Assembly (NCBI GenBank): GCA_964019335.1
Contig: OZ025685.1
Coordinates: 248,001-312,000 of the forward strand
DNA length: 64,000 nt
Source: Diplonema japonicum
Lineage: Eukaryota; Protista; Euglenozoa: Diplonemea
Direction of reading: 5' to 3'
How positions within the stretch are numbered: the first letter of the stretch is position 1; each line of letters opens with the position of its first letter. Below the pieces are notes generated by a model, which saw only the letters and a list, made by a program, of their open reading frames with translations, had not been told where the DNA came from and ran no database searches. The position numbers and the translations under genes were made by a program. Shown piece by piece: positions 10,581 to 61,475 of the stretch.

Positions 10581-11137
10581 TGCAAGAAGAGGCGTTCATG
10601 GCTGTAGGGGCCGTTGCGAACGCTCTTGATAAAGATTTTGTGAAGTATCTGAAGCCATTCTTCCCCCTCTTGAAGTTGGGGTTGGAAAACGTCGAAGCGC
10701 CGTCCGTGTGCAGCATTGCCGTGGGCACTCTCAGCGACGTGCTGTCCGCAGTGACGGTAGACATCGCACTTTACTGCGATGACCTGATGATGGCCCTGCT
10801 GCAAGGCCTCAGCAACGGAAACATGGACAAGGACGTGAAGCCCGCCATCATCTCCACCTTCGGTGACGTGGCACTGAACATCGAGGAGAATTTCGAGAAG
10901 TACCTGCCCGTCGTTATGAATGTGATAGGGGTTGCGGGGAACAAGGTCCAGGAAGAGGTGGTCAAAGACCGTGAGTGCGAGGAGTGGGTATTAAAAAAAA
11001 AAAAATAATAAAATAAAAAAAAGAGAATGTACCAAGACGAAATGCGAGAACACATCTGTTCCGGGTACACCGGGATCTTGATGGGTCTTAAGAAGAAGAA
11101 GAGCCATGTGTTCAAGCAATACGTTGAGCAGGTATGG

Positions 11138-11175
<38 letters not shown>

Positions 11176-12471: not shown

Positions 12472-14562
12472 ATGGCGCGAATGGGGCTGAACATCGCTGC
12501 AATGGGGAGCCGAGACGATCCGCCTCTATCAGCTAGGCTGCACAATGCGATGTCGCCCAGGACGGCTAGAGGCCTGAACACAGCGAGGCTGGGGAATCAC
12601 ACACAAAGAGGAAACCTTTCCCATAGAGGCCCCAAGACTCCACTACGCTCGCCTTTAGCTCTGAGTGAGAGGTATTCCGCAGGGCTAGCATCGCCATCAT
12701 CAAGCTCGCTTCAAAAACGTTTAAGCAGCAACGCGTTAAAATCCCTGAGGAAGGAAGACAGCACAGGCACGGAAACAGAACCAAGCCCGAGTGCAACAGT
12801 ACTGTCGGTGGACATCCCGAAGCTCTCGTTAGGCGCCATCGAGACAAAGGGCAAGGCACAGGCGGAAACGAGAAAGAAAAAACGTATCTCAACAGATAAT
12901 GTCTTCTGCAATGTTGAAGCTGCGAAGAAAAAACTGGAAGCGGACGGGATCGACATCGATGCTCTTAAAGCCGCGTTCAGCAAAACGGATGTTAACGATT
13001 CTGGTCTTGACATAAACGAGTTCAGAAACCTTTGGAAAATGGTTTTCCCGCAACGGCCTTTGGACGAGTCAGCCTGGAGGTACATCGACAGAATCTTCAT
13101 AGAAATCGACAACGACGATTCTGATGAAATCTCGTGGGAGGAAATTCTGTCGTACCTCGACAAATCCCGAACGTTGGTCGAACGTGAGAAACCTCCCACT
13201 CAATGGAAGGAGATCATGTTTCGGTTTGTGGGTTACACTGAGGATGCCTATGATGATTCTGACTCCTTACAAGCCATCATGGTGGCTTTGTACAAATTCG
13301 TCTCGCAGATGGTCGTTGTTTTGTCTATCGTTGTTTTAATGATCGAATCGCTACCTTCGATGCAGAAGGAGGACCCAAATGAATCTCCTGGAAGCACCAC
13401 TACATTTGTTATTGAAACATGTTGTGTTGCGGTGTTCACGGTGGAGTTTTTCATGTGGATTATCTCGTACCCAACATCCGAACAATGGATCGATTCAGAA
13501 GGAAAAGCCCATGTCCTAGACAAGGACGAAGAAGTGTGGCCCCGACCGGACACGATGGAAACAATCAAATGGAGGCTGTTTTTCAAAGAACAGAACACAT
13601 ACATCGATTTTTTATCGATTGTCCCGTATTACATTCTGTTAATCGTGGACGGGCAGAATAACATTTCAGCGTTGGCATCTGTTCGTCTTTTACGGCTTTT
13701 AAGACTCCTGCGTATTACCAGAATTTTAAAATTGGGCCGATCTGGGTCGTATGGGAGAGCCCCGGAACTAGGCGCAGCATTGCAAAAATCTATCACATCG
13801 TTGTTGTTTCTGGTGATGCTCATTGTTATCGCAACGACGATGGCGTCATCGTGGATGTTCTACGCAGAATTAGAACAGGCTTCGTTCAACCCAGTTCTTG
13901 AGAAGTGGGTTCGAAATAACGATTCTGACTACGTCGATGCTGGGGAAGTACTTCAAATGCAATCTATCCCCGAAGCCCTCTGGTGGGGAATCGTCACATT
14001 GACCACTGTAGGGTACGGCGACCTCTACCCGATTACAATCGGCGGGAAGATAATCGCAAGCGTGACAATGTTGGGTGGCCTTATTGTAGTTGGATACCCC
14101 ATCACCATTCTAACCGGGACTTTTCAGATTATGGAGTACGAACGGTTCATGAAGGAGGAACAACTGGATCGTTGTAGGGAATTTTACCAGGGCATCAAAA
14201 CATGGGTCAATTCCCAAGACGGTATCGATGTGAAATTAGAGTCGGAAAACGGGGCAACAATGAAGGGGAACACCAGCAAACGATCTTCTCTGCTGCCGCA
14301 GCCGACCGCCATGGCGGCGAACCAGGATATTGTGGATTTGTTCAACGGGTTGGAGAACCGGATAGCGGAGAGGCTTGGGAGGATTAAGAGGAAGTTGAAC
14401 AAGCTGGAGTGCGACTCCGACGTCAGTGAGAGTGAAATCGACACTGATTCTTCAAGCAGTTGCAGCAGCAGCACTTCGTCCGCAACCTCGCTCACACCCG
14501 CTGCCGCTGCGAATGAACCTTACGCGAGAAACCTTGCCGTTCCAGTTCTACATATTAACTGA
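12472..14562 (+). CDS. Voltage-gated-type K+ channel (6TM) with N-terminal EF-hand pair
   Basis: Selectivity filter TLTTVGYGD, S4 VRLLRLLRLLRITRILKLGR, EF-hand-like loops DVNDSGLDINEF and DNDDSDEISWEE. The ORF-track extension upstream of 12472 is homopolymer UTR. Confidence 0.9.
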   Translation: MARMGLNIAAMGSRDDPPLSARLHNAMSPRTARGLNTARLGNHTQRGNLSHRGPKTPLRSPLALSERYSAGLASPSSSSLQKRLSSNALKSLRKEDSTGTETEPSPSATVLSVDIPKLSLGAIETKGKAQAETRKKKRISTDNVFCNVEAAKKKLEADGIDIDALKAAFSKTDVNDSGLDINEFRNLWKMVFPQRPLDESAWRYIDRIFIEIDNDDSDEISWEEILSYLDKSRTLVEREKPPTQWKEIMFRFVGYTEDAYDDSDSLQAIMVALYKFVSQMVVVLSIVVLMIESLPSMQKEDPNESPGSTTTFVIETCCVAVFTVEFFMWIISYPTSEQWIDSEGKAHVLDKDEEVWPRPDTMETIKWRLFFKEQNTYIDFLSIVPYYILLIVDGQNNISALASVRLLRLLRLLRITRILKLGRSGSYGRAPELGAALQKSITSLLFLVMLIVIATTMASSWMFYAELEQASFNPVLEKWVRNNDSDYVDAGEVLQMQSIPEALWWGIVTLTTVGYGDLYPITIGGKIIASVTMLGGLIVVGYPITILTGTFQIMEYERFMKEEQLDRCREFYQGIKTWVNSQDGIDVKLESENGATMKGNTSKRSSLLPQPTAMAANQDIVDLFNGLENRIAERLGRIKRKLNKLECDSDVSESEIDTDSSSSCSSSTSSATSLTPAAAANEPYARNLAVPVLHIN

Positions 14563-14626
14563 TAAAAAAAAGATTTTTTTTGGGGGGTATTTTTTTTTTT
14601 TTTTTTTCCGGTAAGTGAAAACGTGG

Positions 14627-14660
<34 letters not shown>

Positions 14661-14674
14661 GGATGGGAATACCA

Positions 14675-14802
14675 GGTGGTGGGGATAACATGGAAATGTA
14701 AACAGATGTGTTGTTCGCTGTTGATACCTCCCCGTCGGTCATCACCGGTAGCGCCCGAGTGGAAGAACGTAACGCAGATGCTCTGGGTGGCGAACAGGCA
14801 GC
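14675..14802 (+). ncRNA. HDV-like self-cleaving ribozyme (copy 1)
   Basis: P1 GGTGGTG(14675-81)/CATCACC(14740-46); P2 GCTGTTG/CAGGCAGC; P3 ACC/GGT; L3 TCCCCGTC; P1.1 GG(14747-48); P4 CGCCCGAGT/GCTCTGGGTG; J4/2 G-C(14791)-GAA. There is a 2-nt insertion between P2 and P3. Confidence 0.75.
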
Positions 14803-14976
14803 AAACTACACGGGCTACCCGGGGCGCCCCGGCTGGGGTTGAGCTGCACACCGCACGCATTAAGGACACGACGCGGAACGCAGAAGGAGCTACAGCTAGG
14901 CCGAGGTGCGCCCCCTGTAGTCAAGTAAATGGTGCTTGTGCAGGGTGCCCCCACCGGCTTCCTTTAAATCATCGAG
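14675..14976 (+). mobile_element. Ribozyme-headed non-autonomous retroposon (SINE/SIDE-like), copy 1
   Basis: Aligns over ~300 nt with 19203-19515. Lies between oligo(T) runs. Ends CCTTTAAATCATCGAG-T(n), similar to the 3' ends of the LINE-like fragments. Confidence 0.75.
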
Positions 14977-15075
14977 TTTTTTTTTTTTTTTTTTTTCCCA
15001 TTCCCCACTTCCTCTTTACGTTCATACTGATATGTAATTAGTACCAGGATCTCCTGAGCTGGAGCCCACTTGGTG

Positions 15076-15116
<41 letters not shown>

Positions 15117-15957
15117 GTCACGGAAGGCAAAAAAATACGAATTTCTTTTTTTTTTTGTACGCTTTTAGTTTTTTCTTTTTCTTTTTTTTTTTTCAGTAGA
15201 ACAAAAAAAACAAGGAAATAATTTAAAAAAAAAGGAGAGATTCTGCACACCAAGAAAGGAAACAGGAGCAGGAGGGGGCAGTGTACACAAACTTGACTGT
15301 TATCAATTTGCTGGTTTTGAAGCCAAATGGGGGGGGGGGGGGGGGGGGGCAAAGGATCGTCCAATTAGCCTGTTTCTTCTTCTTCCTTCTCTCTCCTATC
15401 CTTACCCCCCCCCCCCCCCCCCTCCCTCTCTCTCTCTCTCTCTCTCCATAACTCCACATGACCCCCTTTTTTATGATTTTTCTTTTCCTTCATAAAAGAC
15501 AAGAATTTTCTTCTTCTTTTTTTATTTGAAAAAAAAAAATTGCTCGCTTTATTTTTTTTTTCTCTTTTTCTTTTGTTAGATGGGGAACCAACAACACAAC
15601 GAGAAAAAAAAAAAAAAAAACAAGAAAAATAAAGAGGGTGTGGAAAAGAAGGAATCTAAAAAAAAAAAAAAAAAAGGCAGCACCTTGCGTGTATTTTATA
15701 GAAAATCCCCCTCCCCCCCATCTCCATCCTCCAATATTGTACCAGTCAGAGGGAAAAAAAAAAAAAAAAAAAAAAAAAGAAGAAGAACCCCCTGCGTGAA
15801 TACCCGTTCAAGCCGTATCATCTTCCCTGCTGTATTATTTCCTCCCACTCCCCCCCTTTTTTTTTCCAAAAAAAAAAATCTTTAAAAAAAAAAAGGAGGG
15901 CAGGGCACACAAACACACACACACAAAAAAAAAAAAAAAGTCCCTCCCTCCCCCTCT

Positions 15958-17238
15958 ATGCGAGCGAAACTATTATATACCACAATTCTGTTGATAAATG
16001 TGTTGACATGCTCGACTATCAGCACCATTGCCGACTACCAAAGTGGATCGCACTATGAGGTGAGCATGTTAAAAGTAAACCAAACAACACTGACGGGCCT
16101 TGAAAAGCGGAGCGGCAGCCAGCTCACATGGGTTCTAGAAGACCTGGGACACGGCCTGGACATAGGAGTTCAAGTAGACACTATATCGGTTTCCATAGGA
16201 AGCGAAAACGAAATATCCGGCTTGGTACCGTCCTACAAGTTACAAATGGTCGTCACGTGCATATGCATCTCGTGCAATTCGCAACCTTTTGGACAAGAAT
16301 GTTCCACCACACAACCGCTTGAGACGGAGCTCAGATCCGGAAATCAGATCAGCGTTTCCCACCCTGACGAGGGAACAACGGTTACCTACAAATACCAGCT
16401 TTTAATAGAAATAACCGGCGTGCTGGCGATCCGGAACCTGGACTCGGTTTCGATCTCGATTTCCGGAACAAAAAGCGAACGCAAAACGTGTAAAACTACG
16501 TCAGGTGAAAAATGCCATTTCCCGTTTGCACTAAACGGCCAGGTCTTCACCCAATGCACAACGGGTTCTGTTCCTTTGTGTTTTGTGTTTGATGCGAGCG
16601 AACCGGGGAAGACAGGACAATGTACTTCTTGCGGTGAACCATCTGTATCCAATGCCCCTCTCACCATTTCTCCAACTGACGTCCCGACACAAGCTCCTGG
16701 AACACCAGCCCCGAAGGACCTTAATACTGTGTCCCTTGCCATGCGTATAGTAGGTGGATTAAGTATTATATTCTTAGGGTGTTGCATTGGGTGTGGAACG
16801 TTGTTATGGCTCGACAGCGGTCGGAACCCGCCCCCCGAATCAGAAGGGGAAACTGAAGATCATATGCCCAATCATGGTGATGTTGGTGTGTATAGGCAGG
16901 CTAATCTCGCGAACTCTCCTTTCGACCCATCGGAGTTTCAGATTACAGTTGCCTCGTTGCTGGATCACGTGAAAGAGACGGCAGAGGTACCTCCAAACAC
17001 GTCTTGCTGTGTTTGTTTGGAATCTGCTGAGGATGATGGCAACGCTGCTGAAAAACACACTCCTTACGGTGGGGATATAGAGGCGCAAACTATACCTGAT
17101 GACGGTACCGAGCCGAAATCGTGGGCGGTGCTTCCTTGTGGGCATGACATGCATTATTCATGTCTCCGTCTGTGGCTTCTTCAAAGAGCTGGGAAAAAAT
17201 TGGTTATGACATGTCCTGTGTGCAGGGCTCCGGTATGA
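15958..17238 (+). CDS. Signal peptide + fibronectin type II-like domain + TM + RING-H2 E3 ligase
   Basis: Hydrophobic N-terminus; GEKCHFPFALNGQVFTQCT..LC..GQC; TM IVGGLSIIFLGCCIGCGTLLWL; C-terminal CCVC...LPCGHDMHYSCLRLWL...CPVCR. Confidence 0.85.
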   Translation: MRAKLLYTTILLINVLTCSTISTIADYQSGSHYEVSMLKVNQTTLTGLEKRSGSQLTWVLEDLGHGLDIGVQVDTISVSIGSENEISGLVPSYKLQMVVTCICISCNSQPFGQECSTTQPLETELRSGNQISVSHPDEGTTVTYKYQLLIEITGVLAIRNLDSVSISISGTKSERKTCKTTSGEKCHFPFALNGQVFTQCTTGSVPLCFVFDASEPGKTGQCTSCGEPSVSNAPLTISPTDVPTQAPGTPAPKDLNTVSLAMRIVGGLSIIFLGCCIGCGTLLWLDSGRNPPPESEGETEDHMPNHGDVGVYRQANLANSPFDPSEFQITVASLLDHVKETAEVPPNTSCCVCLESAEDDGNAAEKHTPYGGDIEAQTIPDDGTEPKSWAVLPCGHDMHYSCLRLWLLQRAGKKLVMTCPVCRAPV

Positions 17239-17798
17239 TTATGCGGGTGGAATAAATGTACTTTTTTTTTTTTTTTAAAAAATTATAGTTATCTGAAGCG
17301 ATAAGCAGTCAGATGGCGAAGGAAGGTGATGAAGGGGGAGAGGCTTAATCTTTTTTTTGGGGGGGGGGTAAAATCTGTCATTCTCTTCTAACCTTCATAT
17401 TTTTTTTTTTTATTCTGTTCAGTTTTTTCTTTTTCTTTCTCTTTCTGGTGTTTAAAAAAAAAAAAAGAGGGTTGAAGGGGAGAAAAAAAAAAAGAAATAT
17501 TCTCCCATATGTATGCTCTTTTCTTATTTGTTCCCGAGGAAAGGGGGAAGAGGGAGGAAAAAGAAAAATGCGGTGATTTGAAGGGAGGTAAAAAAAAAAA
17601 AAAAAAAAAGGGGTGAAGTGTTTTCTTGGTTTACAGAAAGATCGCAATCTCACAGAAATTATTGTTACTGAGTTGTAGCATAATATTTACACTCCCCCTC
17701 CTCCCCCCTACCCCGCAACTTTCTTGGTGCAATGGCTGCTTTTGGGGTCCCTCCCCCCAGTCATCATTTTAAAACGACTTTCTGCAATGCTAAGTTTG

Positions 17799-17843
<45 letters not shown>

Positions 17844-19202
17844 TTTTTTGCTTTTTAGCCACACTCCCTCCTTTTTTTTTCCCCCCTCTTTTTTTTTTGT
17901 TTGAAATATTAAATTCGAGAATAAACAAATGCCTCCTGTCTTTAGGCTTATTTCATGTATTGAAGGGGGGGGATAATAATAATTAAAAAAAATTGGAGAG
18001 AAAAAACCGCCCCGATAACCCTTATGAGATTATTCCATTGACGAAAGCTATTTTGTTTTTCACCTTTGGGGGGGGGGGTTTTTCTTTTTTTCTTTTTTTT
18101 TATACCCCTGAATGCTACCAGATATATGATGATACGTTAGTTAAGCTAATTGTTATTTCCTTCCTTTCACCTCCTTTTATTTTTTTTCTACAAAAAAAAA
18201 AGTAAGAATTGTTTTAAAACTCAGTCGATTCCCTTCTTTTTTTCTTCCCCCCTTTTTTTTTTTCTTTTTTTTTCTTTTTTTTTTCTTTTCTTTTGCGTTG
18301 CATATCTCTAAAACATGTGGAGAAACTTTTTGCCATTGTCCTTTTTTTTTTTTCTTTACTGGGGGTTTTTTGTCCCCCCCCCCCCCAACCAAATAGCAAT
18401 TCTCTGATTCTCATCCCAACACAGGTTTAAGAGATACGTAACGTTTGAAAGAAGAAAGTTTTTCTTTTTAAGGCGATCCTGTCACATACTGCAGGTTCCC
18501 TTCAAAGACATCTTTTTTTTTCCCTACATGCGAAAACCGGAAGTACATAAAGCTCACTAAAAAGAAGATCCTTCTGCCCCGCTGTGCTATGCAAGCTAAG
18601 AAGAGAGAGAGAGAAAAAAAAAAAAAAAAGGGGTAGGAAAGAAAAGGGGGGGAAGAAATGAGTATAAAGTAACTTTTTTTTTTTCCCCCCCATTTCTCCC
18701 ACCCAGGGATTGATTCCTTGGTGTTAAGCAGTTTTCTTTTCTTGAGACGGCTGGAATAAAAAAAAAAAAAAGAAAGCTGTGGGACCTTCAAGGCCCCCTT
18801 CTTTTATTCTTTCATTTTTTTTTTGTTTCACATTGAATACTGCTGCTTGGGCTTATACACATCAGGGAGGAGGAAAAGAAAGCCTCTTCCTTTTTTTGAT
18901 ATCTGACTTTGTTTCCGTCTTCCTCCGCACTTTTTTTTTTCCCTCTTTTTTTTTTTCATTCTGGGAAAAAAAACCCTCCCCCCCAAAAAAAACAAGAACA
19001 AAAGTAGACTACTGTGGGACCTCTTAATTATTTCATGGGAAAAAAGAGAAGAAGAAGAAGAAGAAGGGGAAAAAAAAGAGGAAATCCCCGCAAGGGAAAC
19101 CAAAAAAACCACAGGGTACGGCGTAAGGGTTTTGCCTTTTAAGGCGAGGCCCTGTCATGTACAGCAGGCTTTTCCCTTCAATTTTTTTTTCTTTTTTTCA
19201 AA

Positions 19203-19336
19203 GGTGTTGGGGATAGCATGAAAATATAAGGAAAACATCAGATGTGTTGTTCGCTGTTGACCTCCTCGTCGGTCATCACCGGTAGCACCCGAGTGGAAGA
19301 ACGTAACGCAGATGCTCAGGGTGACGAACAGGCAGC
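19203..19336 (+). ncRNA. HDV-like self-cleaving ribozyme (copy 2)
   Basis: P1 GGTGTTG(19203-09)/CATCACC(19274-80) with one U.U mismatch; P2 GCTGTTG/CAGGCAGC; P3 ACC/GGT; L3 TCCTCGTC; P1.1 GG; P4 CACCCGAGT/GCTCAGGGTG; J4/2 A-C(19325)-GAA. Confidence 0.78.
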
Positions 19337-19515
19337 AAACTGCACGAGCGCAGAATCTTGGTTACCCGGGACGCCCCGGCTGGGGTTGAGCTGTACACCG
19401 CACGCATTAAGGACACGACGCAGAAGAAGCTACAACTCGGCCGCGGCGCGCCCCCTGTAATCAAGTAGACAGTTCTTGTGCAGGGCGCCGCCAACACCGG
19501 CCTCCTTTAACTCAT
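19203..19515 (+). mobile_element. Ribozyme-headed non-autonomous retroposon (SINE/SIDE-like), copy 2
   Basis: Diverged copy of 14675-14976. Starts just after a T-tract and ends CCTCCTTTAACTCAT-(AT)n-T(n). Confidence 0.75.
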
Positions 19516-20000
19516 ATATATATATATATTTTTTTTTTTTTTGTTCTTTCTTCTTTTCTTTCCAGATAGCGATAGGTGACGCACGGCACAGAAATTGCCT
19601 CGCTTTTTTCTTTCTTTCTTTCTTTTTTTGCATTATTCCCGAGCTACCTTTACTTTCGGAACAAGTATTAAAAAAAAAAAGATTGAAGGGGTGGTTTTTT
19701 TTTTTTTTATTCACAGTGAAAAGAAGGAAAAGGTGTACAAAAAAATGCGACGCACCACCACTACCTCCCGGTTTTGGTTTCTGATACCTTGTTGCCCCCC
19801 CCCCCCCCCCCCCCCCTATTCATTGACAAGCGCAGTTTGCAACGTAGCACTGTGTAAGCGAGCCCACAAGCAAAATGCTTTTTGTTGAATAGCTCCTCTC
19901 CCCCCTTCTTATTATCTTCATTCAGGCTCTCTATTTTATTTTATTTATTATTATTATTATTTTTTTTTTTTCATTTCGTCAGTCCGTCCTGTTTTTTTTA

Positions 20001-21070: not shown

Positions 21071-21910
21071 ATGGGCTGTGTGCATACCAAACATGCTCCG
21101 CAGGAGGAGATCCCTTCGAAGCAGAGACCCGTCGAGAAGGTAGAGGAGAAGGTTGAGAAGAAGGCTGAGGAGGAGCCTAAACAGCACGATGCTCTGAAGA
21201 TGCTCGCAGAGGCCAGCGGGACAGACAAGGTGTTCGTTGCTGCGCTGAACGAGATGGCAGAGGAGAAGAAGGGGGCGGAAGACAACAAGGAGACAAAGAG
21301 GGAGGCACAGGAGGACAGCGACCATGGGCTGAGCGATGTGGGCCCGTCGCCTGCTGCAGGTGACGAAAATGACGCCAAGCAGGAAAAACCCGAAGAAGAG
21401 AAGCCTACCGAAGAAGAGGAAAAACCTGTTGAGGCTGAGGAGGAGGCCAAGACCGAGGAGGTGGTTGTTGAAGAAGAGGCCAAGACCGAGGAGGTGGCTG
21501 TTGAGGAGGAGGCCAAGACCGAGGAGGTGGCTGTTGAAGAAGAAGCCAAGACCGAGGATGTGGCTGTTGAAGAAGAAGCCAAGACCGAGGAGGTGGCTGT
21601 TGAGGAGGAGGCCAAGACCGAGGAGGTGGCTGTTGAGGAAGAAAAGCCTGTTGAGGCTGAGGCCAAGGACGGGATGGTGGATGTTTCTTTGAGCGAGATC
21701 CCCAGGGAGAAGGAGGTCGAGAAGACTGAGGTGCCCACCGACGTTGAGGTTGTGGAAACCGAAGTCACTGAGGAGGCCACCAAGGTTGAAGAGGCCAATG
21801 ATGAGGAAGAGAATGTGGCAGAACCCGATCAGGCGGAGGAACCCACCTCCCCCTCTTCCCCTGGGCAGAAGAAGAAGAACAAGAAGAACAAGAGGAAGAA
21901 CAAGAACTAA
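21071..21910 (+). CDS. Acidic repeat protein with predicted N-myristoylation/palmitoylation
   Basis: MGCVHTK start; six 33-nt/11-aa repeats EEEAKTEEVAV (21437-21634); polybasic C-terminus KKKNKKNKRKNKN. Confidence 0.85.
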   Translation: MGCVHTKHAPQEEIPSKQRPVEKVEEKVEKKAEEEPKQHDALKMLAEASGTDKVFVAALNEMAEEKKGAEDNKETKREAQEDSDHGLSDVGPSPAAGDENDAKQEKPEEEKPTEEEEKPVEAEEEAKTEEVVVEEEAKTEEVAVEEEAKTEEVAVEEEAKTEDVAVEEEAKTEEVAVEEEAKTEEVAVEEEKPVEAEAKDGMVDVSLSEIPREKEVEKTEVPTDVEVVETEVTEEATKVEEANDEEENVAEPDQAEEPTSPSSPGQKKKNKKNKRKNKN

Positions 21911-33099: not shown

Positions 33100-35388
33100 A
33101 TGGGACGGACACTGTTGACAGCAACCCTCATCTTGGGGCTGCTTTCGGGGTGCGCGGAGGCGCATTTGAACGTAGTGTGCACCGCCACATCGAAGCAGCA
33201 GCCCAACACCTTCGCCTTCTGGTTCATGACCTACTACCATTCAGGCGAGGATGTCCCTCCCGGCCAGGTCCACATCCAAGACCCCAGCGCCCGTGTGATC
33301 TCGGCCTCGTTCTCGAACGTTTGCAAGCCGAATGCCGACAACCTTCCTTATGCAGGGTCGCCCGTGCAGGCCTTTGAGGATGTGCTGAAGACCCACTGCC
33401 TGGATTCAAGGGACCCCAACGGGAGGGTGCCTATCTTCCCGGACAGTGCGGTGGAGTGCTACAACGCGGACACCAACACGGGGCTCTCGAACTACGCGGT
33501 GGGGCTTCGGGGCAATCAGGAGGTGCTGACCGACCCTTACTTCGCGCGCAGAACCATGGTGGACTACTACTTCGTTGTTGTGGACAACCAGTTCGTCGAG
33601 ACGGGGAGCTACAAGACGCACTTCACGGACACGGACGAAAACCTCGACCCCTGCCACGACGGCTACCCCTGTTCTTTGAGGAGGCACGCGTGGACCTTTG
33701 AGATCTCGGTCATCACCGGGCCCCCCCGCTGCACCACCCCGCCGCCTCCCTCCGCCACGACTAACGTCGTTTCCGGGTCGCTAGCGTCGTGCGACGGGAG
33801 CTCCCGTGTGATCGAGGCGGGGTCGCTGTGCCACGCGCAGTGCAACCCCGGGTACGAAAAGATTGGGGTCCTGGAGTGCATGGAGCAGCAGGACGGGACG
33901 GCGGCCTGGAACCCCGGGTTCAGCTGCACCAGCAGCACGGTCTGCCAGCTCCCCTCTTCCGGCAACAACGGGGGCATCGATGCCGGGATTGTCGGGGTTG
34001 CGTCCCCCTGCTCCACTTTGAACGCTGTTGGGACGACGTGTTTCTACACCTGCACCGGGTTCGACCACCAGCAGAGCGTGGGGAAGATCCTGTGCTCGAC
34101 AACCGCGACGGGAGCGGCGGTCTGGGTCACCGACCCGGCTACCGCCTCCGACTACGACGGCTGCAGCTGGACGGTGGCTCCCACGCCGCAGCCCACCCCG
34201 GTGCCCGCTCCGTTCTGGGTGACCGGCTGCTTCTCCGACTCGATCTCAAACAGGTTGCTGCCGCACCTCGCCTACAGGGGCGACGAGAACACGGTCGAGT
34301 TGTGCGCCGAGAAGTGCCATGCCGGGGGATACACCTTCTCGGGGGTGCAGTATGGGACGGAGTGCTGGTGCGGCGACGACGTGTCGAGAGGGGTGCGCCA
34401 GAGCGACGAGGACTGCGAGGAGCTGGCGTGCACGGGAGACTCGAAAACGAAATGCGGCGGGGGGTACAGGATGAAGGTGCACCAGTACACGCTGCCGTCG
34501 CCGCCAATCAGCCACCCCCTTGTCTGGGAAGGGTGCTACGAGGACAGCGCCTCCTCCAGAAGGCTCACCTTTCTCTACACCGACATCGAGGAGCTCACCA
34601 GGGAGGAGTGCACGACCCTTTGCAGGCTGAGGGGGTACAAGTTCTGCGGGCTGCAAGCGGGGAGGGAGTGCTGGGGTGGGAACGACCTCTCCACGTCGAC
34701 CCGGACCGACCCTGAGAGGTGCGACGTGCGGTGCAAGAAGGACGGCCTCATTTGCGGCGGGTCCCATGTCAACACCATCTGCAGCCTGTCTCCCATTCAG
34801 CCCGCTCCCGTGAGCCCTGTTCTGGAGGGTTGTTTCAAGGACAGCTCTGCGAGAAGGCTCCCCCACCTCGCCTTTTCCTCGTCGGGGGTGACGGTCGAGG
34901 AGTGCTCGAAGACCTGCCAGCACAACGGGTACACCTATGCAGGGGTGCAGTGGAGCGACGAGTGCTGGTGCGGGAACGACTTGACCACCTCGAAGAGAAC
35001 GACCATCTCGGAGTGCTCCGAGCCCTGCCAGGGGGACAGATCCGTGGCCTGCGGCGGGAGTTACAGGAACAGGGTGTACGCGGTGCAAGCTGTCCCTGCA
35101 AAGGACCCTGTGACCTACCTCGGCTGCTTCCGGGACTACTCCTCCAACAGACAGCTCGACACACGGGCGTACAAAGACGGGACCGGGAACACCATCGAGG
35201 AATGCACCAAAACCTGCCAGCACAACAGGTACCTGTACGCGGGGCTCCAGTACAGCAGCGAATGTTGGTGTGGGAACACCCATCCTACAACCCCCGCATC
35301 TGAGGGAAGGTGCAACAAGCGCTGCTCCGGGGACAGCACCTCGTATTGTGGTGGGGGTTGGCACATGGGCCTTTACCTTGTTAAATAG
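33100..35388 (+). CDS. Secreted protein with two sushi-like and four WSC domains
   Basis: Signal peptide MGRTLLTATLILGLLSGCAEA; four GC[FY].D...R.L...T.E.C...C...Y...G[VL]Q...ECW.G...CGG units; Cys-rich CCP-like modules upstream. Confidence 0.88.
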   Translation: MGRTLLTATLILGLLSGCAEAHLNVVCTATSKQQPNTFAFWFMTYYHSGEDVPPGQVHIQDPSARVISASFSNVCKPNADNLPYAGSPVQAFEDVLKTHCLDSRDPNGRVPIFPDSAVECYNADTNTGLSNYAVGLRGNQEVLTDPYFARRTMVDYYFVVVDNQFVETGSYKTHFTDTDENLDPCHDGYPCSLRRHAWTFEISVITGPPRCTTPPPPSATTNVVSGSLASCDGSSRVIEAGSLCHAQCNPGYEKIGVLECMEQQDGTAAWNPGFSCTSSTVCQLPSSGNNGGIDAGIVGVASPCSTLNAVGTTCFYTCTGFDHQQSVGKILCSTTATGAAVWVTDPATASDYDGCSWTVAPTPQPTPVPAPFWVTGCFSDSISNRLLPHLAYRGDENTVELCAEKCHAGGYTFSGVQYGTECWCGDDVSRGVRQSDEDCEELACTGDSKTKCGGGYRMKVHQYTLPSPPISHPLVWEGCYEDSASSRRLTFLYTDIEELTREECTTLCRLRGYKFCGLQAGRECWGGNDLSTSTRTDPERCDVRCKKDGLICGGSHVNTICSLSPIQPAPVSPVLEGCFKDSSARRLPHLAFSSSGVTVEECSKTCQHNGYTYAGVQWSDECWCGNDLTTSKRTTISECSEPCQGDRSVACGGSYRNRVYAVQAVPAKDPVTYLGCFRDYSSNRQLDTRAYKDGTGNTIEECTKTCQHNRYLYAGLQYSSECWCGNTHPTTPASEGRCNKRCSGDSTSYCGGGWHMGLYLVK

Positions 35389-51619: not shown

Positions 51620-52934
51620 ATGTCAAAAAGATGGTCTGAAGAGGACGTGGACCGCCTGAGGGCGGGGTTCAGGGAGATAGACAAGGATAAGTATGTCAAA
51701 CCCCCCCCCCCCCCCCCCCCAACAACAACAACAACAACAACAACAACAAAACTAGAAACGGATTGATAGACAAAAACGATTTGAAAGAACTACTAAAAAG
51801 ACACTTTGGTGAACACTGCGACGATGACGAAGTAGAGGAGTACATGCCCGTCCTGGGTGCCGACGACACAGTAGTTTTCGAGGACTACGTCCATTACCTA
51901 ACCACGGACACCTCGTTGAGGTTCGACGTGAAATTCATACGGTATATGAGGCAGAAGTGGGAGGACCACCTTGGCCTGCAAGTATACCTCCCCTTCTTGT
52001 GTTTTTTCGTGTTCTTCCTCCTACACGGTAAGGGGCTTGGGTCGGGGTACTGGGTGACCTTCTCCCTCAATGACAAGGTCATGGGTGAAGAGTTTGAACT
52101 GTCCGAAGACCTCCGATTCGAAAAATTTTACAAAGACATCGCGAACACAGAAGAATATTGGGAATGGGCAAAAGGGCCTTTGATGGGAGCATGGTGGCAA
52201 GGCGAGGATGCAGACGCGGCTAACGAATTCGTTCAATTTGCTAACATGCCTGTCGGGGCGATGAAAATACGGCAAATGAGAGTGGCGCCCAGTGCTTGTT
52301 CGTCGCGAGAGGATATTCTTAAAAATGCGTACAATTCCTTGAACCCGACGAAGGCCGCGTTGCGTCTGCAAGACTTCCCTTACGATTGTTACAGCGATTG
52401 GGGCCCCGCGACCCCAAGCGACAAACAACCGTACGCCATCACCGTCACAAATTCCACAACAGACATTTTCTCCGCCTCCACACAACGCACTTACCTTGAA
52501 AGCAGCATGATTGACCAGGAAGCACGCGATTTAGTATCGGAAGCGTTTTTCTGGAGGCCGTGCAGCGGTGTTAACGGGATCAACGCTTCCCTCACAATGG
52601 TCCTGGAGGGCAAAGCGGCCACATACGGATGCTCCGGGTACGCGCTGATCATACCCTTTTCATGGCCCGCTGAGAAAGTCTCAAAAGCATTGGGTTTCTT
52701 GGAATCCGGTGTGTCGGTTACGCATGACAACAATACCTTCAACCTTCCGTGGGTGGACAACCAAACAAGGGCTTTGTGTATGATTATCTTTGTGAAAACA
52801 AAAAAAAATTGTACAGCTGTCGAAATGTTCACGTTCAACCAGAATCTGCAGCTTTTCAGCAGGATTCAATACCTGGTGGAGGTGACGGCTGGCGGGTCGT
52901 ACATTCCCATTTACAGCAATATAAAGTATGGACG

Positions 52935-52974
<40 letters not shown>

Positions 52975-55383
52975 AGTTTCCGACTGTTCCAGTGGTCGAC
53001 CGATCCCTTTGTGATCCACTTTTTCATGTTTGTGTTTTTCACGTCGCTTGTTTTTTACTTTGCGTCGTGGTGTATGGAGCTGTGGAGGAACACGACCGAC
53101 TTCATGGTGGACAGGCGGAGGAGGGGGTTCTTCGCAAGGGTGACGTCGCTGTTCATCACGTTCTTCAGCTCGTTCTGGACCATCTTCGATTTTATGAACT
53201 ACGTGTTTTTCTTCACTGTGTGGGGGCTTCGGTTCGTGTCGCTCGGTTTCGGGAAAACCAACAACCCAGTCCTGCAAAACGACTGGTACCCAGATGAGTA
53301 CGAAACGGTGGCCCGCTCCACCCAAATCATATCCTACCTTGACAGCATAAACGGGTTGTTGTGCGTGGGCCGCATCTTCTACTTTTTAAGGCTGGACAAC
53401 CGTTTCAACGTGTTGACAAAAACCATAGAAGTCGCATTGTACGAACTTGCAGGGTTGTTGTTTATCTTTTTCGTCGTGTTTCTCGGCTTCTGTCTCATGG
53501 GTTTCACCGTGTTCGGGCACGTGGTAGAGGACTACCGTGACATCGGAAGCGTTATCGGGACGCTGCTTCGGTACCTCGTCGGTGATTTCGACTACGAGCA
53601 GATCCGTGAGGAGCGCAGGATATTCGCGCCGATATTCTTCGTGCTGTTCACCGCGTTGTGTTTCTTCCTTCTATTTAATATGTTCATTGCTGTTCTATCC
53701 GATGCGTTTGCAAAGGTTCAAGAGGAAAAGTACAAACCAGCTTTGTTGGACTCTCTTCTTAAAAATACCGACGACGACGCGTACGAGCCTCTCGAATCGC
53801 AAACCGGGAACTTCTTCACCGATCTCGCGATCGTTAGAGAAATCATGTATTGGATAAAAACACTATTACTTGCAGCCCAGAATTTAATACGCCGGGGCCC
53901 CGAGTGGGACGCGAGGTACAAGGAAACCCTGGAACGAACGCGAAGCGAAAACCCGCGGTTGTATTGGCAAACCCGCGAGAGGGAGATGGTCGATAGAAAA
54001 TCATGTACAGCATTCGTCGACAAGCTCAACCTCTGCCCCATCTCACTGGAAGGTTTCCTTATCGACGGCGACGACAATGCCGACGAGGATGACAATGCCT
54101 TCCAGGGCTTCGGGAACGACTTCAACACGGTGATGCAAACGCTAGTCGACGAACCCTCCGACAAAATGGAAAGAGAACGACAAGACACCTTATTAGAACT
54201 CCTTGAATCCCATTACTACTGGAACCAAGAGGTACGCGGTATCGCTCAAGTCGGACAAACCTTAGTCGATTACGATGACGATCCACGAGTTTACATTTTA
54301 CGCGAAATCGCCATTTCAAAAATGAACGATAGCGACAATGGAAGCATGACGGCTTCGAGCAGCCATACTGAGGAAGACGACAACGAGCAGGAATTGAAGG
54401 ACGAACAAGAGGTCGCAGCGCACGCTGTTATCAGAAAGGAAGAACAAAAACGGGTTATGAAGGATGTCATTGCAAGGGTTTCCTCAATAACCTCGAACAA
54501 GAAAAGCCTTGAACAGGTCATCAACAGAGCAGCGGCAACCGCGTTAAAATCCAGAATGGTTCGAAGAAAGGTTATCGCACGATTCGAACAAGGAACCCCC
54601 TGCAAGATCCGCGCACACCAGCTCATCGGTGCGAGATACGGAAGGTACATCACGGACGTCTTACAAATCCCTCAACAGTCCAAAAAAATCCTTCTTTCCA
54701 ATGGAAAAGATACGACAGAGTGGGTTACCATCACACAAGGAACGTCTGAGGAAGAATATCTAAGCGAACTACGGTTTAATTTCGACATTTCCGAGGGAAA
54801 GGAATGTATTGTAAAGCACAGCATTTCAGGTGAAATCGTCCATCTCTACTATGAGCTGGTGATCGAGAAGGAAACTTATATTGTGACAGAAGGCCCTGGT
54901 GAGGCACCTAACTGGCAAGACGGTGAATGGTCGCGAGCACCCGACGGTTCATTACTCCCGACACAAGGCCCCAAAACCGGAGTGTGGAACTGCACCGTTC
55001 CCGACCATATAGTATTTGCAAACATACAAAAAATCATGGACCAGCATAATGGGTTGTTGAAGCTTGCGTCTGTCGAGGACGCGATCATAGCAGGAGGAAG
55101 GGATATCGACAATGAGATGCTGTCGGAGCCTACTTGCTCTGAGAGTACTGTTCACGAATACCCTTTGGACCATATTGAAGAGGTGGGGTGTTACAACCAG
55201 CTGGAGCTGATTTACGAACCGACGACGATTTTCAGGGAGCACCTCGAGAGCAAGCTTATTCAGCTGATACGAAAAAGGCTCCCGACGTTGATGTTAGAAA
55301 CACTCAGCACGCAGCAACTGATGACGCTGCTCGAGGTAAAGGTGAGACGGGCCGAGGAACCCGTGAACGCACCCACTGAATAA
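51620..55383 (+). CDS. PKD2/polycystin-2-like channel with N-terminal EF-hand, 4 exons
   Basis: Spliced EF loop DKDKNGLIDKND; GAMKIRQMRV, WVDNQTRAL, LLRYLVGDFDY, LFNMFIAVLSDAF. Introns 51691-51755, 52778-52816, 52926-52976. Confidence 0.9.
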
Positions 55384-60573: not shown

Positions 60574-61475
60574 CAGTCCGAGTTCCTTGAAATCATGAAC
60601 GCGGCGAAGGACCAGCAACAAAAGACTGCTGGTGCCTTGGTCGACAAGCCTTTGGTATATTATTATAAGAGAATTACAATAAAAAAAAAATAAAGGTTGT
60701 AGTTAACGGGCCCTCGCAGATCCCCAAGGATGTGGCGGCCAGGGTGAGGTCATCCTCCCAGTTTATTGCTGACGGTAATGAGGGTGGTGTTGGTGTCCCG
60801 CCCCCCAGGCGGGTGATGAGGTCGCCCGAGCCGGCTGAGAGGAGGCGATCGTCACCATCCCCGACCCCAGAGCCGTCTGTGAACGTCCAGGAACTGACGA
60901 GAAAAGCTTCCCTAACCATGGACAAGGGCGAGAGCAAAAGAATGCTGGGGAAGGCTACTGTCGAAGAGTACAAGGTAATTTTTTTTTTTTTTTTTTTTTT
61001 TAAACCCCCACCCCAGGACATGCTGAAGAGAAAGGCACAGCAGACACGGGCGGCCTTTGACGAACCGAAATTCACAGAACCGTATGAAACCGAAAAGGCT
61101 TCGTCTCCCGCACCTGAACCTGAGCCAGCTAGGGATCAGCCGGAATCTGAGGCAGCTCGCGCTGCGTCGCCTTCTTCCTCAAATGCATCGCCCACCCGGC
61201 TGATGCCCAGTGGGAGGCCTTGGGCGAGGTCTGCAGCGGCTGCTGTACCAGCAAAGGAGCCGGAGAACGAGTATGAGCTCAAGGAAACACGGGTTGAAGG
61301 TACGTGTGCGCCCCCTCCTATTAAGAAGCCCAGGGCATATTCATCAGTATGCGAACAAAAAAAAAAAAAAAAAAAAAATCACGCACAGACTAGCGCAAGC
61401 GGCGGAAGAGGTGTTCCCAGTTACATGAGAACCACTCAGTCCAGTAAACCTGGCAGAGGGGGTAAGAAGAAGTAG
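60057..61475 (+). CDS. EF-hand (calmodulin/centrin-like pair) protein with disordered Pro/Ser-rich tail, 5 exons
   Basis: DADGSGSIDSEE and DTDGNAEIDESE loops. Introns 60534-60576, 60655-60695, 60975-61016, 61347-61388 give a continuous frame. Confidence 0.85.

What the first reader, a model, noticed from the sequence alone, without database searches (positions are those of the whole stretch)
19203..19515. Second ribozyme-headed copy: structure-preserving divergence and a formerly coding 3' half
Seen: the core ACC-UCCUCGUC-GGU-CAUCACC-GG-UAG-P4-AC-GAA-P2' follows the layout of R2 ribozymes. Differences from copy 1 fall mostly in loops or swap G-U and A-U pairs (P4, J1/2 helix). In the 3' half, 19421-19468 vs 14881-14928 read QKKLQLGRGAPPVIK* vs QKELQLGRGAPPVVK*, with 5 of 7 differences silent (including TAG/TAA). 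Inference: the element is a fusion of a LINE 5' ribozyme to the last codons and 3' UTR of a LINE ORF, i.e. a short internally deleted element.
Basis: partly seen in the sequence, partly recalled or inferred. Interest (0 to 1): 0.85.

Follow-up and report, generated by a model that had tools for sequence, protein, structure and literature searches.

The report
Ribozyme-headed SINE with fossil LINE tail
This stretch is one decayed copy of a ~320-base jumping element, present over a thousand times in a marine protist (diplonemid) genome. It begins with a hepatitis-delta-type self-cutting RNA fold and ends in what looks like the last 16 codons and tail of a LINE that is no longer in the genome, so it is a new example of a known strategy, not a new kind of element.

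Summary
Both copies are real. Copy 2 (19203-19515) belongs to a ~320-nt subfamily "a", 96-97% identical to its relatives. Copy 1 (14675-14976) is an older member of a ~311-nt subfamily "b". The family gives 1,300-1,550 first-look matches in this 62.5-Mb diplonemid genome (probably Diplonema japonicum).

The HDV-like layout is exact, and G1 is the sharp 5' end of the copies. The two copies alone do not show structure-preserving divergence: copy 2 has a private P1 mismatch, and covariation within the family is negligible. The real support is cross-family. Three LINE heads found here have the same architecture with unrelated P1, P2 and P4 sequences, and 168 of 170 pair cells stay paired.

All 5 fixed a/b differences in the last 16 codons plus stop are synonymous third-position changes, against 2 of 8 private mutations at third positions.

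No autonomous element carries this head or an ORF ending GAPPV[IV]K*. The young APE+RT LINEs share only the last 17 nt and the (AT)n tail. Head-to-foreign-RNA chimeras point to template switching.

Cleavage is untested. The scan has already reported this family on other DNA of this genome.

The parts
19203..19515 (+). Copy 2: body of a subfamily-a SINE-like retroposon (313 nt here; typical copies are 320 nt because this copy has a private 7-nt deletion after 19417)
   Evidence: 96-97% identical to 40 scored copies out of 1,551 first-look candidates. The boundaries come from an alignment of 32 copies with flanks.
19203..19336 (+). Predicted HDV-like ribozyme of copy 2. P1 19203-19209 pairs with 19274-19280. 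J1/2 is 19210-19252. P2 19253-19259 pairs with 19329-19336. P3 19260-19262 pairs with 19271-19273. L3 is 19263-19270. P1.1 joins 19264-19265 to 19281-19282. P4 is 19286-19323. The candidate catalytic C is 19325.
   Evidence: Pair table and family pair counts. U19207 is a private change that leaves a U.U mismatch in P1.
19337..19420 (+). Middle region with no recognised origin; it differs least between subfamilies
   Evidence: Only 5 fixed a/b differences fall in element positions 135-225.
19421..19468 (+). Fossil ORF end: 15 codons plus a TAG stop (QKKLQLGRGAPPVIK*). In typical copies the frame reads TRRGTQKK... upstream.
   Evidence: All 5 fixed a/b differences here are synonymous third-position changes. 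Private mutations show no such bias, with 2 of 8 at third positions.
19469..19515 (+). 47-nt 3'-UTR-like end. The last 17 nt (19499-19515) form the terminal motif shared with LINE-A and LINE-B.
   Evidence: Only the last 17 nt are significantly similar to the LINE 3' ends (z 5.5-6.6); the rest is not (p 0.08-0.46).
19516..19543 (+). (AT)7 microsatellite tail followed by a T-run (tail plus target T-tract)
   Evidence: An (AT)n tail of variable length followed by T-rich flank is seen in all subfamily-a copies.
14675..14976 (+). Copy 1: an old, diverged subfamily-b copy. Its ribozyme is 14675-14802 with candidate catalytic C at 14791. Its fossil ORF end is 14881-14928 with a TAA stop. Its tail ends ...ATCAT-CGAG, followed by a T-run.
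   Evidence: Only 89-90% identical to its nearest relatives. It has a b-type tail, a 9-nt and a 13-nt deletion, and a 2-nt insertion between P2 and P3.

Best explanation
The stretch is a decayed copy of an abundant SINE-like, non-autonomous non-LTR retroposon of a diplonemid.

Shown:
- More than 1,300 candidate copies.
- A sharp 5' end at G1 and 5'-truncated copies.
- Insertion into T-rich intergenic tracts in the orientation of the host genes.
- An HDV-like nested double-pseudoknot layout in the first 134 nt. Three LINE heads in the same genome have the same layout with unrelated helix sequences.
- A 3' end whose last 17 nt and (AT)n tail match young APE+RT LINEs.

Inferred mechanism:
1. A copy is transcribed passively as part of a polycistronic precursor.
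2. The head folds and cuts itself 5' of G1, setting the RNA's exact 5' end.
3. The 3' stem-loop domain, the terminal UCCUUUAACUCAU motif and the AU/U-rich tail are recognised in trans by the reverse transcriptase of a T-tract-targeting LINE (LINE-A/B type).
4. The U-rich tail pairs with the nicked A-run of the bottom strand, and target-primed reverse transcription makes a new copy, which fixes its orientation.

Inferred origin: the element is a hybrid. A ribozyme head and middle part are joined to the last ~16 codons and ~47-nt 3' UTR of a LINE ORF. The join arose by internal deletion or, more likely, by template switching of the reverse transcriptase. The donor LINE lineage(s) are not in this assembly.

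The two window copies are themselves probably inactive. Copy 2 has a P1 mismatch and a 7-nt deletion. Copy 1 has a P2/P3 insertion and two deletions.
For: Copy number and identity.

Boundaries: the 5' boundary is exact at G1 in 31 of 32 aligned copies, and the 3' end is CTCAT plus (AT)n.

5'-truncated copies: L018, a 40-nt fragment in L002, and many more.

Fold: 98.6% of cells are paired in 20 family members, against 55% or less in slid controls. SINE a/b, LINE-A, LINE-B and the OTU-bearing LINE-E share the same order of P1, J1/2, P2, P3, L3, P1.1 and P4, with C followed by (G/A)AA. P1, P2 and P4 differ in sequence, yet 168 of 170 cells pair. The L3 U...G and the CC/GG of P1.1 are conserved, and P1 starts at the first base of each element. 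The SINE head is not similar in primary sequence to those LINE heads, so it is an independent instance of the fold.

Genomic setting: 26 of 29 copies are co-oriented with the longest flanking ORF, and the 30 nt upstream are 63% T against a 24% background.

LINE partners: LINE-A is 2,034 aa with APE and RT. It is young, and an identical ORF is present in a transcriptome. It ends in the same 17 nt plus (AT)n tail.

Coding fossil: 5 of 5 fixed a/b differences in the last 16 codons plus stop are synonymous third-position changes, against 1 of 12 at third positions upstream and 2 of 8 among private mutations. By my arithmetic (1/3)^5 = 0.004, and Fisher's test gives 0.016. Further subfamilies read bring the count to 8 of 9 changes that are synonymous third-position ones.

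Template switching: head 1-146 is fused at a 6-nt microhomology to an internal part of a tyrosine-recombinase element mRNA. Another copy of the head is fused to the 5' end of 18S rRNA.
Against: No cleavage or RNA-end data: the public runs available are contigs only and show no molecule ends.

No Rfam family matches, even at E <= 10.

Nested MFE folding is no more stable than shuffled sequence (z -0.3 to +1.6), and only P4 is robustly recovered.

The SINE's P1 closes with G1-C rather than the G.U usual in HDV.

I drew the helix assignments in the LINE heads by hand.

Covariation within the family is negligible.

Subfamily b carries an A.C mismatch in P4.

The donor LINE was not found. The 5 variable 'silent' sites also lie at unpaired or wobble-tolerant positions of a predicted 3' stem-loop, so an RNA-structure constraint explains part of the pattern.

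The b-type tail has no LINE counterpart.
Confidence: 0.7

Rival explanations
1. One reading: the element is a SIDE in the R2 sense, a direct internal deletion of one autonomous LINE that has this same ribozyme at its 5' end and an RT ORF ending GAPPV[IV]K* at its 3' end.
For: An ATG lies just 5' of P2, as in the LINE heads. One open frame of 75-77 codons runs from that ATG to the fossil stop in both subfamilies, and the 6-nt indel between them is in frame. The stop lies 47 nt (a) or 44 nt (b) from the end, against 46 nt in LINE-A/B/C.
Against: No such parent is in the assembly. The complementary 'not-SINE' pattern filters returned 134 hits, of which 130 were listed, and all of those are SINE indel variants or 5'-truncated copies. 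A head-anchored search with about 56% design coverage gave 36 hits, all SINE variants or chimeras. None of 218 related LINE proteins ends that way. A phmmer search of 1.84 billion proteins found nothing. An open frame of 77 codons in GC-rich DNA is not unlikely by chance.
Confidence: 0.15
2. The synonymous-looking pattern in the last 16 codons is not a coding fossil. It reflects RNA-structure constraint (stems conserved, unpaired bases free to change) plus chance, and the 3' half was never coding.
For: The 3' 110 nt fold into a long imperfect hairpin in which the 'GAPPVIK' codons form the 5' arm and the 3' UTR the 3' arm. Four of the five variable sites are unpaired and the fifth sits at a wobble-tolerant pair. 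No donor ORF exists. Only 5 to 9 substitutions are involved, and the frame and window were chosen after the fact.
Against: When only unpaired positions of the 48 nt are counted, 6 of 7 subfamily-level changes fall on third codon positions, where about 32% is expected (my count; p about 0.006). All are synonymous, including TAG/TAA. Private mutations in the same 48 nt are spread evenly. The predicted 3' hairpin is not more stable than shuffles (z -0.3 to -0.5).
Confidence: 0.3
3. The exact 5' end is set by an internal promoter that starts transcription at G1 (as proposed for Pr77 in trypanosomatids). The HDV-like fold is inactive or incidental.
For: No cleavage evidence. There is no Rfam hit and no thermodynamic signal. 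In L1Tc the same 77 nt act as both promoter and ribozyme (PMC3383444).
Against: Four sequence-unrelated heads keep every helix and core base of the fold, with P1 always starting at base 1 of the element. A promoter does not require this. Copies lie co-oriented inside transcription units, where release by cleavage makes sense.
Confidence: 0.1
4. The copies are domesticated intergenic regulatory modules of the host (SIDER-like), kept for mRNA processing rather than as parasites.
For: They are strictly intergenic, sense-oriented and sit next to T-tracts. HDV-like elements in Leishmania 3' UTRs have been linked to mRNA down-regulation (PMC4035085).
Against: Copies are young (95-97% identical) and decay freely: both window copies carry damaging private changes, and there are many truncated and internally deleted copies. 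Nothing indicates conservation at orthologous sites.
Confidence: 0.05

Closest known systems
R2 SIDEs and R2/R1 hybrid SIDEs of Drosophila (Eickbush & Eickbush 2012, PMC3414825)
   Same: Short non-autonomous elements made of a 5' HDV-like ribozyme joined to the 3' end of a non-LTR element. The hybrid class joins a ribozyme from one lineage to the 3' end of another and uses the machinery of the second. Template jumps onto other RNAs are seen at 5' ends.
   Different: SIDEs are rare, sit at rDNA-specific sites, and their parents are identifiable. Here there are over 1,300 copies dispersed in intergenic T-tracts of polycistronic units, no parent for either end is in the genome, and the tail is (AT)n/T-rich.
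L1Tc/NARTc, ingi/RIME and SIDER of trypanosomatids, with the Pr77 HDV-like ribozyme (PMC3185411, PMC3383444, PMC4035085)
   Same: Both hosts are euglenozoans with polycistronic transcription. In both, a LINE and a short non-autonomous partner each begin with an HDV-like ribozyme that releases the element RNA from co-transcripts.
   Different: Pr77 is one conserved 77-nt hallmark shared in sequence by LINE and SINE. Here the SINE and LINE heads share only the fold, and the ribozyme is 109-134 nt with a 35-60-nt J1/2. The LINE relatives found are all diplonemid, with no trypanosomatid hits. Tails are not poly(A). Cleavage is untested.
HDV/HDV-like self-cleaving ribozymes, including R2 ribozymes (PMC3774820)
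   Same: Nested double pseudoknot. P1 is formed by the first ~7 nt and the ~7 nt immediately 3' of P3/L3. L3 has a U and a G plus the CC that forms P1.1. The catalytic C lies in J4/2. J1/2 is long and variable. L3 of the SINE (UCCUCGUC) differs from genomic HDV L3 at two of its last three positions (own knowledge).
   Different: The SINE closes P1 with G1-C instead of G.U. P2 has a one-base bulge. No Rfam HDV-clan model scores it. Activity is unknown.
Stringent-type LINE/SINE pairs that share a 3' tail (for example eel UnaL2/UnaSINE1; own knowledge, not checked here)
   Same: The SINE is mobilised because its 3' end copies the LINE's 3' recognition sequence, followed by a short repeat tail.
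   Different: Here only 17 nt plus the repeat tail are shared. The predicted 3' hairpins of the LINE (compact, about 42 nt) and the SINE (about 100 nt) differ.

Membership tests
HDV-like self-cleaving ribozyme | P1 of ~7 bp between the nucleotides immediately 3' of the cleavage site and the ~7 nt immediately 3' of P3' | tested here: met
   Typical copies pair 7 of 7 (one G.U). The first base of P1 is the first base of the element as defined independently by the repeat boundary. Window copy 2 has one U.U mismatch.
HDV-like self-cleaving ribozyme | 3-bp P3 enclosing L3 with the conserved U...G, and two C's that pair with GG after P1' (P1.1) | tested here: met
   ACC/GGU, L3 UCCUCGUC, and CC with GG. 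These are invariant in 20 copies and present in all four head lineages.
HDV-like self-cleaving ribozyme | P2 closing the outer pseudoknot, and P4 between P1.1 and J4/2 | tested here: met
   P2 has 7 bp with a 1-nt bulge. P4 has 8 bp with a 1-nt bulge. MFE folding recovers P4.
HDV-like self-cleaving ribozyme | Unpaired catalytic C in J4/2, just before P2' | tested here: met
   C19325 (A-C-GAA) in copy 2. The equivalent C is followed by GAA or AAA in all heads. Only its presence was tested, not its chemistry.
HDV-like self-cleaving ribozyme | Helices supported by compensatory change | tested here: met
   Within the SINE family there is almost none. Across SINE, LINE-A/B and LINE-E, the P1, P2 and P4 sequences are different and 168 of 170 cells pair, while the SINE and LINE heads are not alignable by sequence. 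Caveat: helices were assigned by hand.
HDV-like self-cleaving ribozyme | Site-specific self-cleavage 5' of G1 | not testable with these tools
   Only contig-level public runs were available, and no molecule ends could be read.
HDV-like self-cleaving ribozyme | Match to a curated Rfam HDV-clan covariance model | tested here: not met
   No hit at gathering score on the window nor at E <= 10 on either copy. The long J1/2 may be the cause, and this is not a defining property of the fold.
SINE-like non-autonomous non-LTR retroposon | Short, non-coding for RT, dispersed high-copy, defined ends, with 5'-truncated copies | tested here: met
SINE-like non-autonomous non-LTR retroposon | 3' end shared with an autonomous LINE of the same genome | tested here: met
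   The last 17 nt plus the (AT)n tail are shared with LINE-A/B. The sharing does not extend further, and no LINE has the subfamily-b tail.
SINE-like non-autonomous non-LTR retroposon | Target-site duplications | tested here: inconclusive
   Flanks on both sides are T-runs, so duplications cannot be delimited.
tRNA-, 7SL- or 5S-derived SINE (internal Pol III promoter) | Head derived from a small Pol III RNA | tested here: not met
   No tRNA was detected in 14000-20000. No Rfam small-RNA match.
SIDE (short internally deleted element) in the strict sense | Both ends collinear with, and near-identical to, an identifiable full-length autonomous parent | tested here: not met
   No parent was found for the head (about 56% design coverage) or for the ORF end. 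The LINE heads are not sequence-similar.
L1Tc/ingi clade Pr77 elements | The conserved 77-nt Pr77 hallmark at the 5' end, and an RT of the ingi/L1Tc clade | tested here: inconclusive
   No Pr77 reference sequence was at hand. The relatives of LINE-A's APE-RT are all diplonemid (D. papillatum, EukProt transcriptomes), with no trypanosomatid protein among 93 hits. No phylogeny was made.

The most novel reading that the evidence does not exclude
The 16-codon tail is not a fossil but is still read. SINE RNAs would be translated from the ATG that sits just 5' of P2, through the 75-77-codon frame that both major subfamilies keep open, to the conserved stop 44-47 nt from the 3' end. Selection would then act on the C-terminal peptide, or on where the ribosome stops next to the 3' recognition hairpin, for instance to hand the RNA to LINE protein. 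That would explain why four SINE subfamilies differ there almost only by synonymous changes even though no coding donor exists.
Probability: 0.07. Interest if true: 0.75.

Novelty: new member of a known kind. Interest (0 to 1): 0.45.

Why it matters
HDV-like ribozymes heading LINEs and their short parasites are documented for R2, RTE and the trypanosomatid L1Tc/ingi group. I found no paper reporting them in diplonemids, which are among the most abundant marine protists.

In this genome at least four sequence-unrelated heads keep the same fold. That gives a ready-made natural covariation set for this ribozyme class. It also suggests that self-cleavage is the general way retroposons escape from polycistronic transcripts in Euglenozoa.

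The tail result adds a small evolutionary point. SINE subfamilies can preserve the codon-position footprint of LINE lineages that have vanished. Head-to-foreign-RNA chimeras show the template-switching route by which such hybrids arise.

None of this changes the known mechanism, and cleavage remains to be shown.

Tried and rejected
- **Rfam:** searched at gathering score and at E <= 10; no ribozyme family matched.
- **MFE folding:** z-scores for six heads and five 3' ends were uninformative, as expected for pseudoknots.
- **Bulk fetch:** After that I could only take small pieces, so the ends of most of the 8 or more RT families were never examined.
- **SINE peptide search in the genome:** the top 150 hits were all SINE copies. 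A 418-aa 'open frame' turned out to be poly-T read as Phe next to a host gene.
- **First 'not-SINE' pattern:** six excluded positions were too strict (only about 18% of unrelated sequences would pass), so I replaced it with single-position filters (then 75, 97-99).
- **Clusters of motif hits with 1.3-kb spacing:** this is a segmental tandem repeat holding an old SINE variant with 4-5 tandem copies of a ~49-nt internal unit, not a LINE.
- **Head followed by a 280-aa ORF (L068):** not an autonomous ribozyme-headed element but a chimera with a tyrosine-recombinase element. Intact copies of that element (L069, L070) lack the head.
- **Public reads:** contigs only. They confirm the locus and its high copy number and say nothing about RNA ends.
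- **Equal stop-to-end spacing as evidence of homology with LINE-A/B/C:** rejected, because the 3' UTR similarity outside the last 17 nt is not significant.
Full report
**What is at the coordinates**

The window is G000:C38:248001-312000 of a 62.5-Mb, 132-contig eukaryotic assembly. All long ORFs in the window lie on the + strand and are separated by long T-tracts.

A DNA search of the genome with copy 2 gave 1,551 first-look candidates. The 40 that were scored are full-length ~320-nt copies at 95-97% identity.

At the 3' end the body ends in CTCAT, followed by (AT)n and T-rich flank.

Copy 1 is different. Its nearest relatives, a 311-nt subfamily "b" with another tail (…ATCAT-CGAG, then a T-run), are only 89-90% identical to it.

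**Organism**

- A host DNA ligase in the window is 100% identical to an unnamed EukProt transcriptome ORF. Its best named relative is Diplonema papillatum at 30%.
- LINE proteins from this genome have their relatives in D. papillatum and in diplonemid transcriptomes.
- The window holds mini-introns of the form GTATG + poly(A) + AG, 43-53 nt long, all on the + strand. This fits the published description of Diplonema japonicum introns, with a median of 41 nt and A as the most abundant base in the tract before the 3' splice site (PMC12621601).

I therefore call it a diplonemid, probably D. japonicum. The species name is an inference and also a lead from earlier notes of this scan.

**The ribozyme**

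The first 134 nt can be drawn as an HDV-like nested double pseudoknot:

- P1 is bases 1-7, pairing with the 7 nt directly after P3'.
- J1/2 is a 43-nt A/U-rich junction.
- P2 has 7 bp with one bulge.
- P3 is ACC/GGU.
- L3 is UCCUCGUC. Its two C's pair with the GG after P1' to form P1.1.
- P4 has 8 bp with one bulge.
- An unpaired C (19325) is followed by GAA and then P2'.

These are the rules given for R2 and other HDV-like ribozymes: P1 anneals to the ~7 nt immediately downstream of L3/P3, there is a conserved L3 G, and J1/2 ranges from 23 to over 700 nt (PMC3774820).

On 20 family members, 98.6% of pair cells are standard pairs, against 25-55% when the 3' partners are slid. The family is too young to show covariation. 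Only one distal P4 pair has a double change, two pairs have one-sided changes, and subfamily b has an A.C mismatch in P4.

Two of about nine point differences lie in paired columns. One is an A-U/G.U swap. The other, U19207, breaks P1 in copy 2 and is private to that copy. Copy 1 has a 2-nt insertion between P2 and P3.

Rfam finds nothing, even at E <= 10. Nested MFE folding is no better than shuffled sequence.

**Cross-family support for the fold**

In the flanks of fetched copies I found 5'-truncated 3' ends of a LINE (L019, L028). A search with its C-terminal 167 residues gave three families:

- A very young family, LINE-A, with ORFs of about 2,036 aa and 98-99% identity.
- A 77% relative, LINE-B, of about 2,070 aa.
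- A 48% relative, LINE-C, of about 1,640 aa.

LINE-A encodes an APE endonuclease and an RT. An identical ORF is present in the EukProt transcriptome.

The 5' ends of LINE-A and LINE-B, and of a degenerate OTU-bearing LINE next to a SINE copy (LINE-E in L002), have the same order of elements as the SINE head. P1 starts at the first base of the element, there is a 41-60-nt J1/2, and then come P2, P3, a U-CC-N-N-G L3, P1.1, an 8-bp P4 and a C followed by GAA or AAA. Their P1, P2 and P4 sequences are different.

Over the seven heads tabulated, 168 of 170 pair cells are standard pairs. LINE-A and LINE-B differ in P4 by a C-G to U-A exchange. The SINE head is not significantly similar in primary sequence to any LINE head (z 1.6-1.9), whereas the LINE heads are related to each other (z 4.5-16). 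The SINE head is therefore an independent instance of the fold.

I assigned the LINE helices by hand, which is a caveat. Their positions are nevertheless fixed by the conserved P3/L3 core and by the element's first base.

**The 3' half**

Using 31 a-copies and 13 b-copies, I listed the differences fixed between the subfamilies.

- In the last 16 codons plus stop (element positions 226-273) there are five: CAA/CAG, CTC/CTA, CGC/CGA, GGC/GGT and TAG/TAA. All are third-position and synonymous.
- Upstream (positions 1-225), only 1 of 12 point differences is at a third position of that frame.
- As a neutral control, rare (post-insertion) variants in the same 48 nt fall 2 of 8 on third positions.

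By my arithmetic (1/3)^5 = 0.004, about 0.012 after allowing for three frames. Fisher's exact test against the private variants gives 0.016.

Further subfamilies visible in the pattern listings (CTG…CGA GGA, and CAA…CGG GGA) bring the count to 8 synonymous third-position changes and 1 second-position change. So the silent-site bias does not disappear with more copies. It sharpens.

There is a competing constraint. The 3' 110 nt fold into a long hairpin whose 5' arm is the "GAPPVIK" codons, and the variable sites are unpaired or wobble-tolerant. Conditioning on unpaired positions still leaves 6 of 7 changes on third positions, where about a third is expected.

**Search for the autonomous parent**

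No LINE ORF ends in this peptide.

- The LINE-A and LINE-B ORFs end …PLLKGDRCR* and LINE-C ends …QKGERGR*. In all three the stop lies 46 nt from a terminal …TCCTTTA(A/T)CTCAT.
- Only the last 17 nt of the SINE match them significantly (z 5.5-6.6). The rest of the 3' UTR and the preceding 46 nt do not.
- I searched for the amino-acid-level motif (G A P P V I/V K stop) preceded by something other than SINE sequence. Two complementary single-position filters together let through 15/16 of unrelated sequences. They returned 134 hits, of which 130 were listed, and all of those are SINE indel variants or 5'-truncated copies.
- None of 218 retrieved LINE proteins ends that way.
- A phmmer search with the 77-codon SINE frame against 1.84 billion representative proteins found nothing.
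- The b-type tail occurs only on SINE-b.
- A head-anchored search (design coverage about 56%, because two permissive filter positions were used) gave 36 hits, all SINE variants or chimeras.

One chimera joins head bases 1-146, at a 6-nt microhomology, to an internal part of the mRNA of a tyrosine-recombinase element. Intact copies of that element lack the head. Another chimera joins the head to the 5' end of 18S rRNA. These are what reverse-transcriptase template switching onto SINE RNA would leave behind. They show a route by which a head can acquire a foreign 3' module, as in the R2/R1 hybrid SIDEs (PMC3414825).

**Genomic behaviour**

- 26 of 29 copies point the same way as the longest flanking ORF. 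One of the three exceptions is the antisense frame of a LINE fragment.
- The 30 nt upstream are 63% T, against 24% in the window.
- CA precedes G1 in 13 of 31 copies (all).
- 5'-truncated copies exist.
- Public runs hold the locus, with unique flanks identical in two runs, but only as contigs. No RNA start or end could be read.

**Reading**

This is a SINE-like parasite of T-tract-targeting LINEs. It most likely frees itself from polycistronic transcripts by HDV-like self-cleavage and is copied through a short shared 3' motif.

Its tail is best read as a codon-position fossil of a LINE lineage no longer present. I put that sub-claim at about 0.5-0.6, against about 0.3 for structure plus chance. 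A hybrid made by template switching fits better.

Both window copies carry private damage and are probably dead.

**Comparison with what is known**

Compared with the literature (R2 SIDEs, PMC3414825; L1Tc/NARTc and Pr77, PMC3185411, PMC3383444, PMC4035085), this is the same strategy in a lineage where the papers I could search do not report it.

Earlier notes of this scan had already described the same family on other windows of this genome. I used them as leads and re-derived the points cited here.

Noticed in passing
L068:25-170 and onward (G000:C85:310444-); intact relatives L069 and L070: SINE head bases 1-146 are fused at a shared 6-nt CACGAG to an internal point of the mRNA of an element that encodes a cysteine-rich protein and a tyrosine recombinase (DIRS- or Crypton-like). 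This looks like a template-switch retro-chimera. Residues 170-266 of the chimeric frame belong to yet another abundant short repeat.
   Followed up: partly
G000:C93:159243-159318 (-), seen only in the listing: The SINE head, up to about base 142, is followed directly by the universal 5' end of 18S rRNA. This is another head-to-foreign-RNA chimera. An 18S-like fragment also lies upstream of the copy in L029.
   Followed up: no
L002:934-1064 (-): A degenerate LINE with an OTU-like protease region begins, right after a T-run, with a complete HDV-like fold (P1 GGGAAC/GUUCCU). About 75 nt upstream lies a 40-nt, heavily 5'-truncated SINE-a tail.
   Followed up: partly
L066:59-1816 and L066:28-6132 (LINE-A, G000:C23:513160-519300): An ATG inside J1/2 of the ribozyme opens a 585-codon frame that overlaps, in another frame, the 2,034-codon APE+RT frame. 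The first ATG of that main frame lies 21 nt after the ribozyme. An ATG just 5' of P2 is present in all four head lineages (SINE, LINE-A, LINE-B, LINE-E).
   Followed up: no
L065:1-1701 (G000:C2:55750-57450); similar clusters on C6, C17 and C19: A 1.33-kb segmental tandem repeat contains an old, CpG-decayed SINE variant in which a ~49-nt internal unit (from ATTAAGG to GGTG) is repeated 4-5 times in tandem.
   Followed up: partly
L005:1811-1881 (-): A tRNA-Lys(UUU) gene called by ARAGORN overlaps the first 10 nt of a SINE copy. The tRNA lacks its true 3' T-stem and acceptor strand, so the SINE abuts a 3'-truncated tRNA.
   Followed up: no
window 11132-11174, 52926-52976, 61347-61399 (+): Mini-introns of the form GTATG + a long poly(A) + AG. 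There are 3 matches against 0.05 expected by chance, consistent with the A-rich tract reported for D. japonicum introns.
   Followed up: partly
flanks of 31 SINE copies; LINE-A copy L048:17-20: The dinucleotide CA precedes G1 in 13 of 31 copies and in the LINE-A copy. Together with the upstream T-run this reads like a splice-acceptor-type context (Yn-CAG with G = G1). It is unexplained: it could be a target preference or a link to trans-splicing.
   Followed up: no
L046:147-188, L044:189-230, L045:186-227: The 46-nt 3' UTRs of LINE-A/B and LINE-C fold into the same compact hairpin, with compensatory differences (apical stem GUCU/AGAC versus GUUCC/GGAAC; outer stem AUGAG/CUCAU versus GAGA/UCUC). 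The terminal motif forms the 3' arm. For LINE-C the fold has z = -2.6.
   Followed up: partly
window 21403-21666 and 34295-35277: There is a 33-nt coding tandem repeat (six overlapping 99-nt copies detected, Glu/Lys-rich) and four ~300-nt spaced repeats that read like WSC-type cysteine domains.
   Followed up: no
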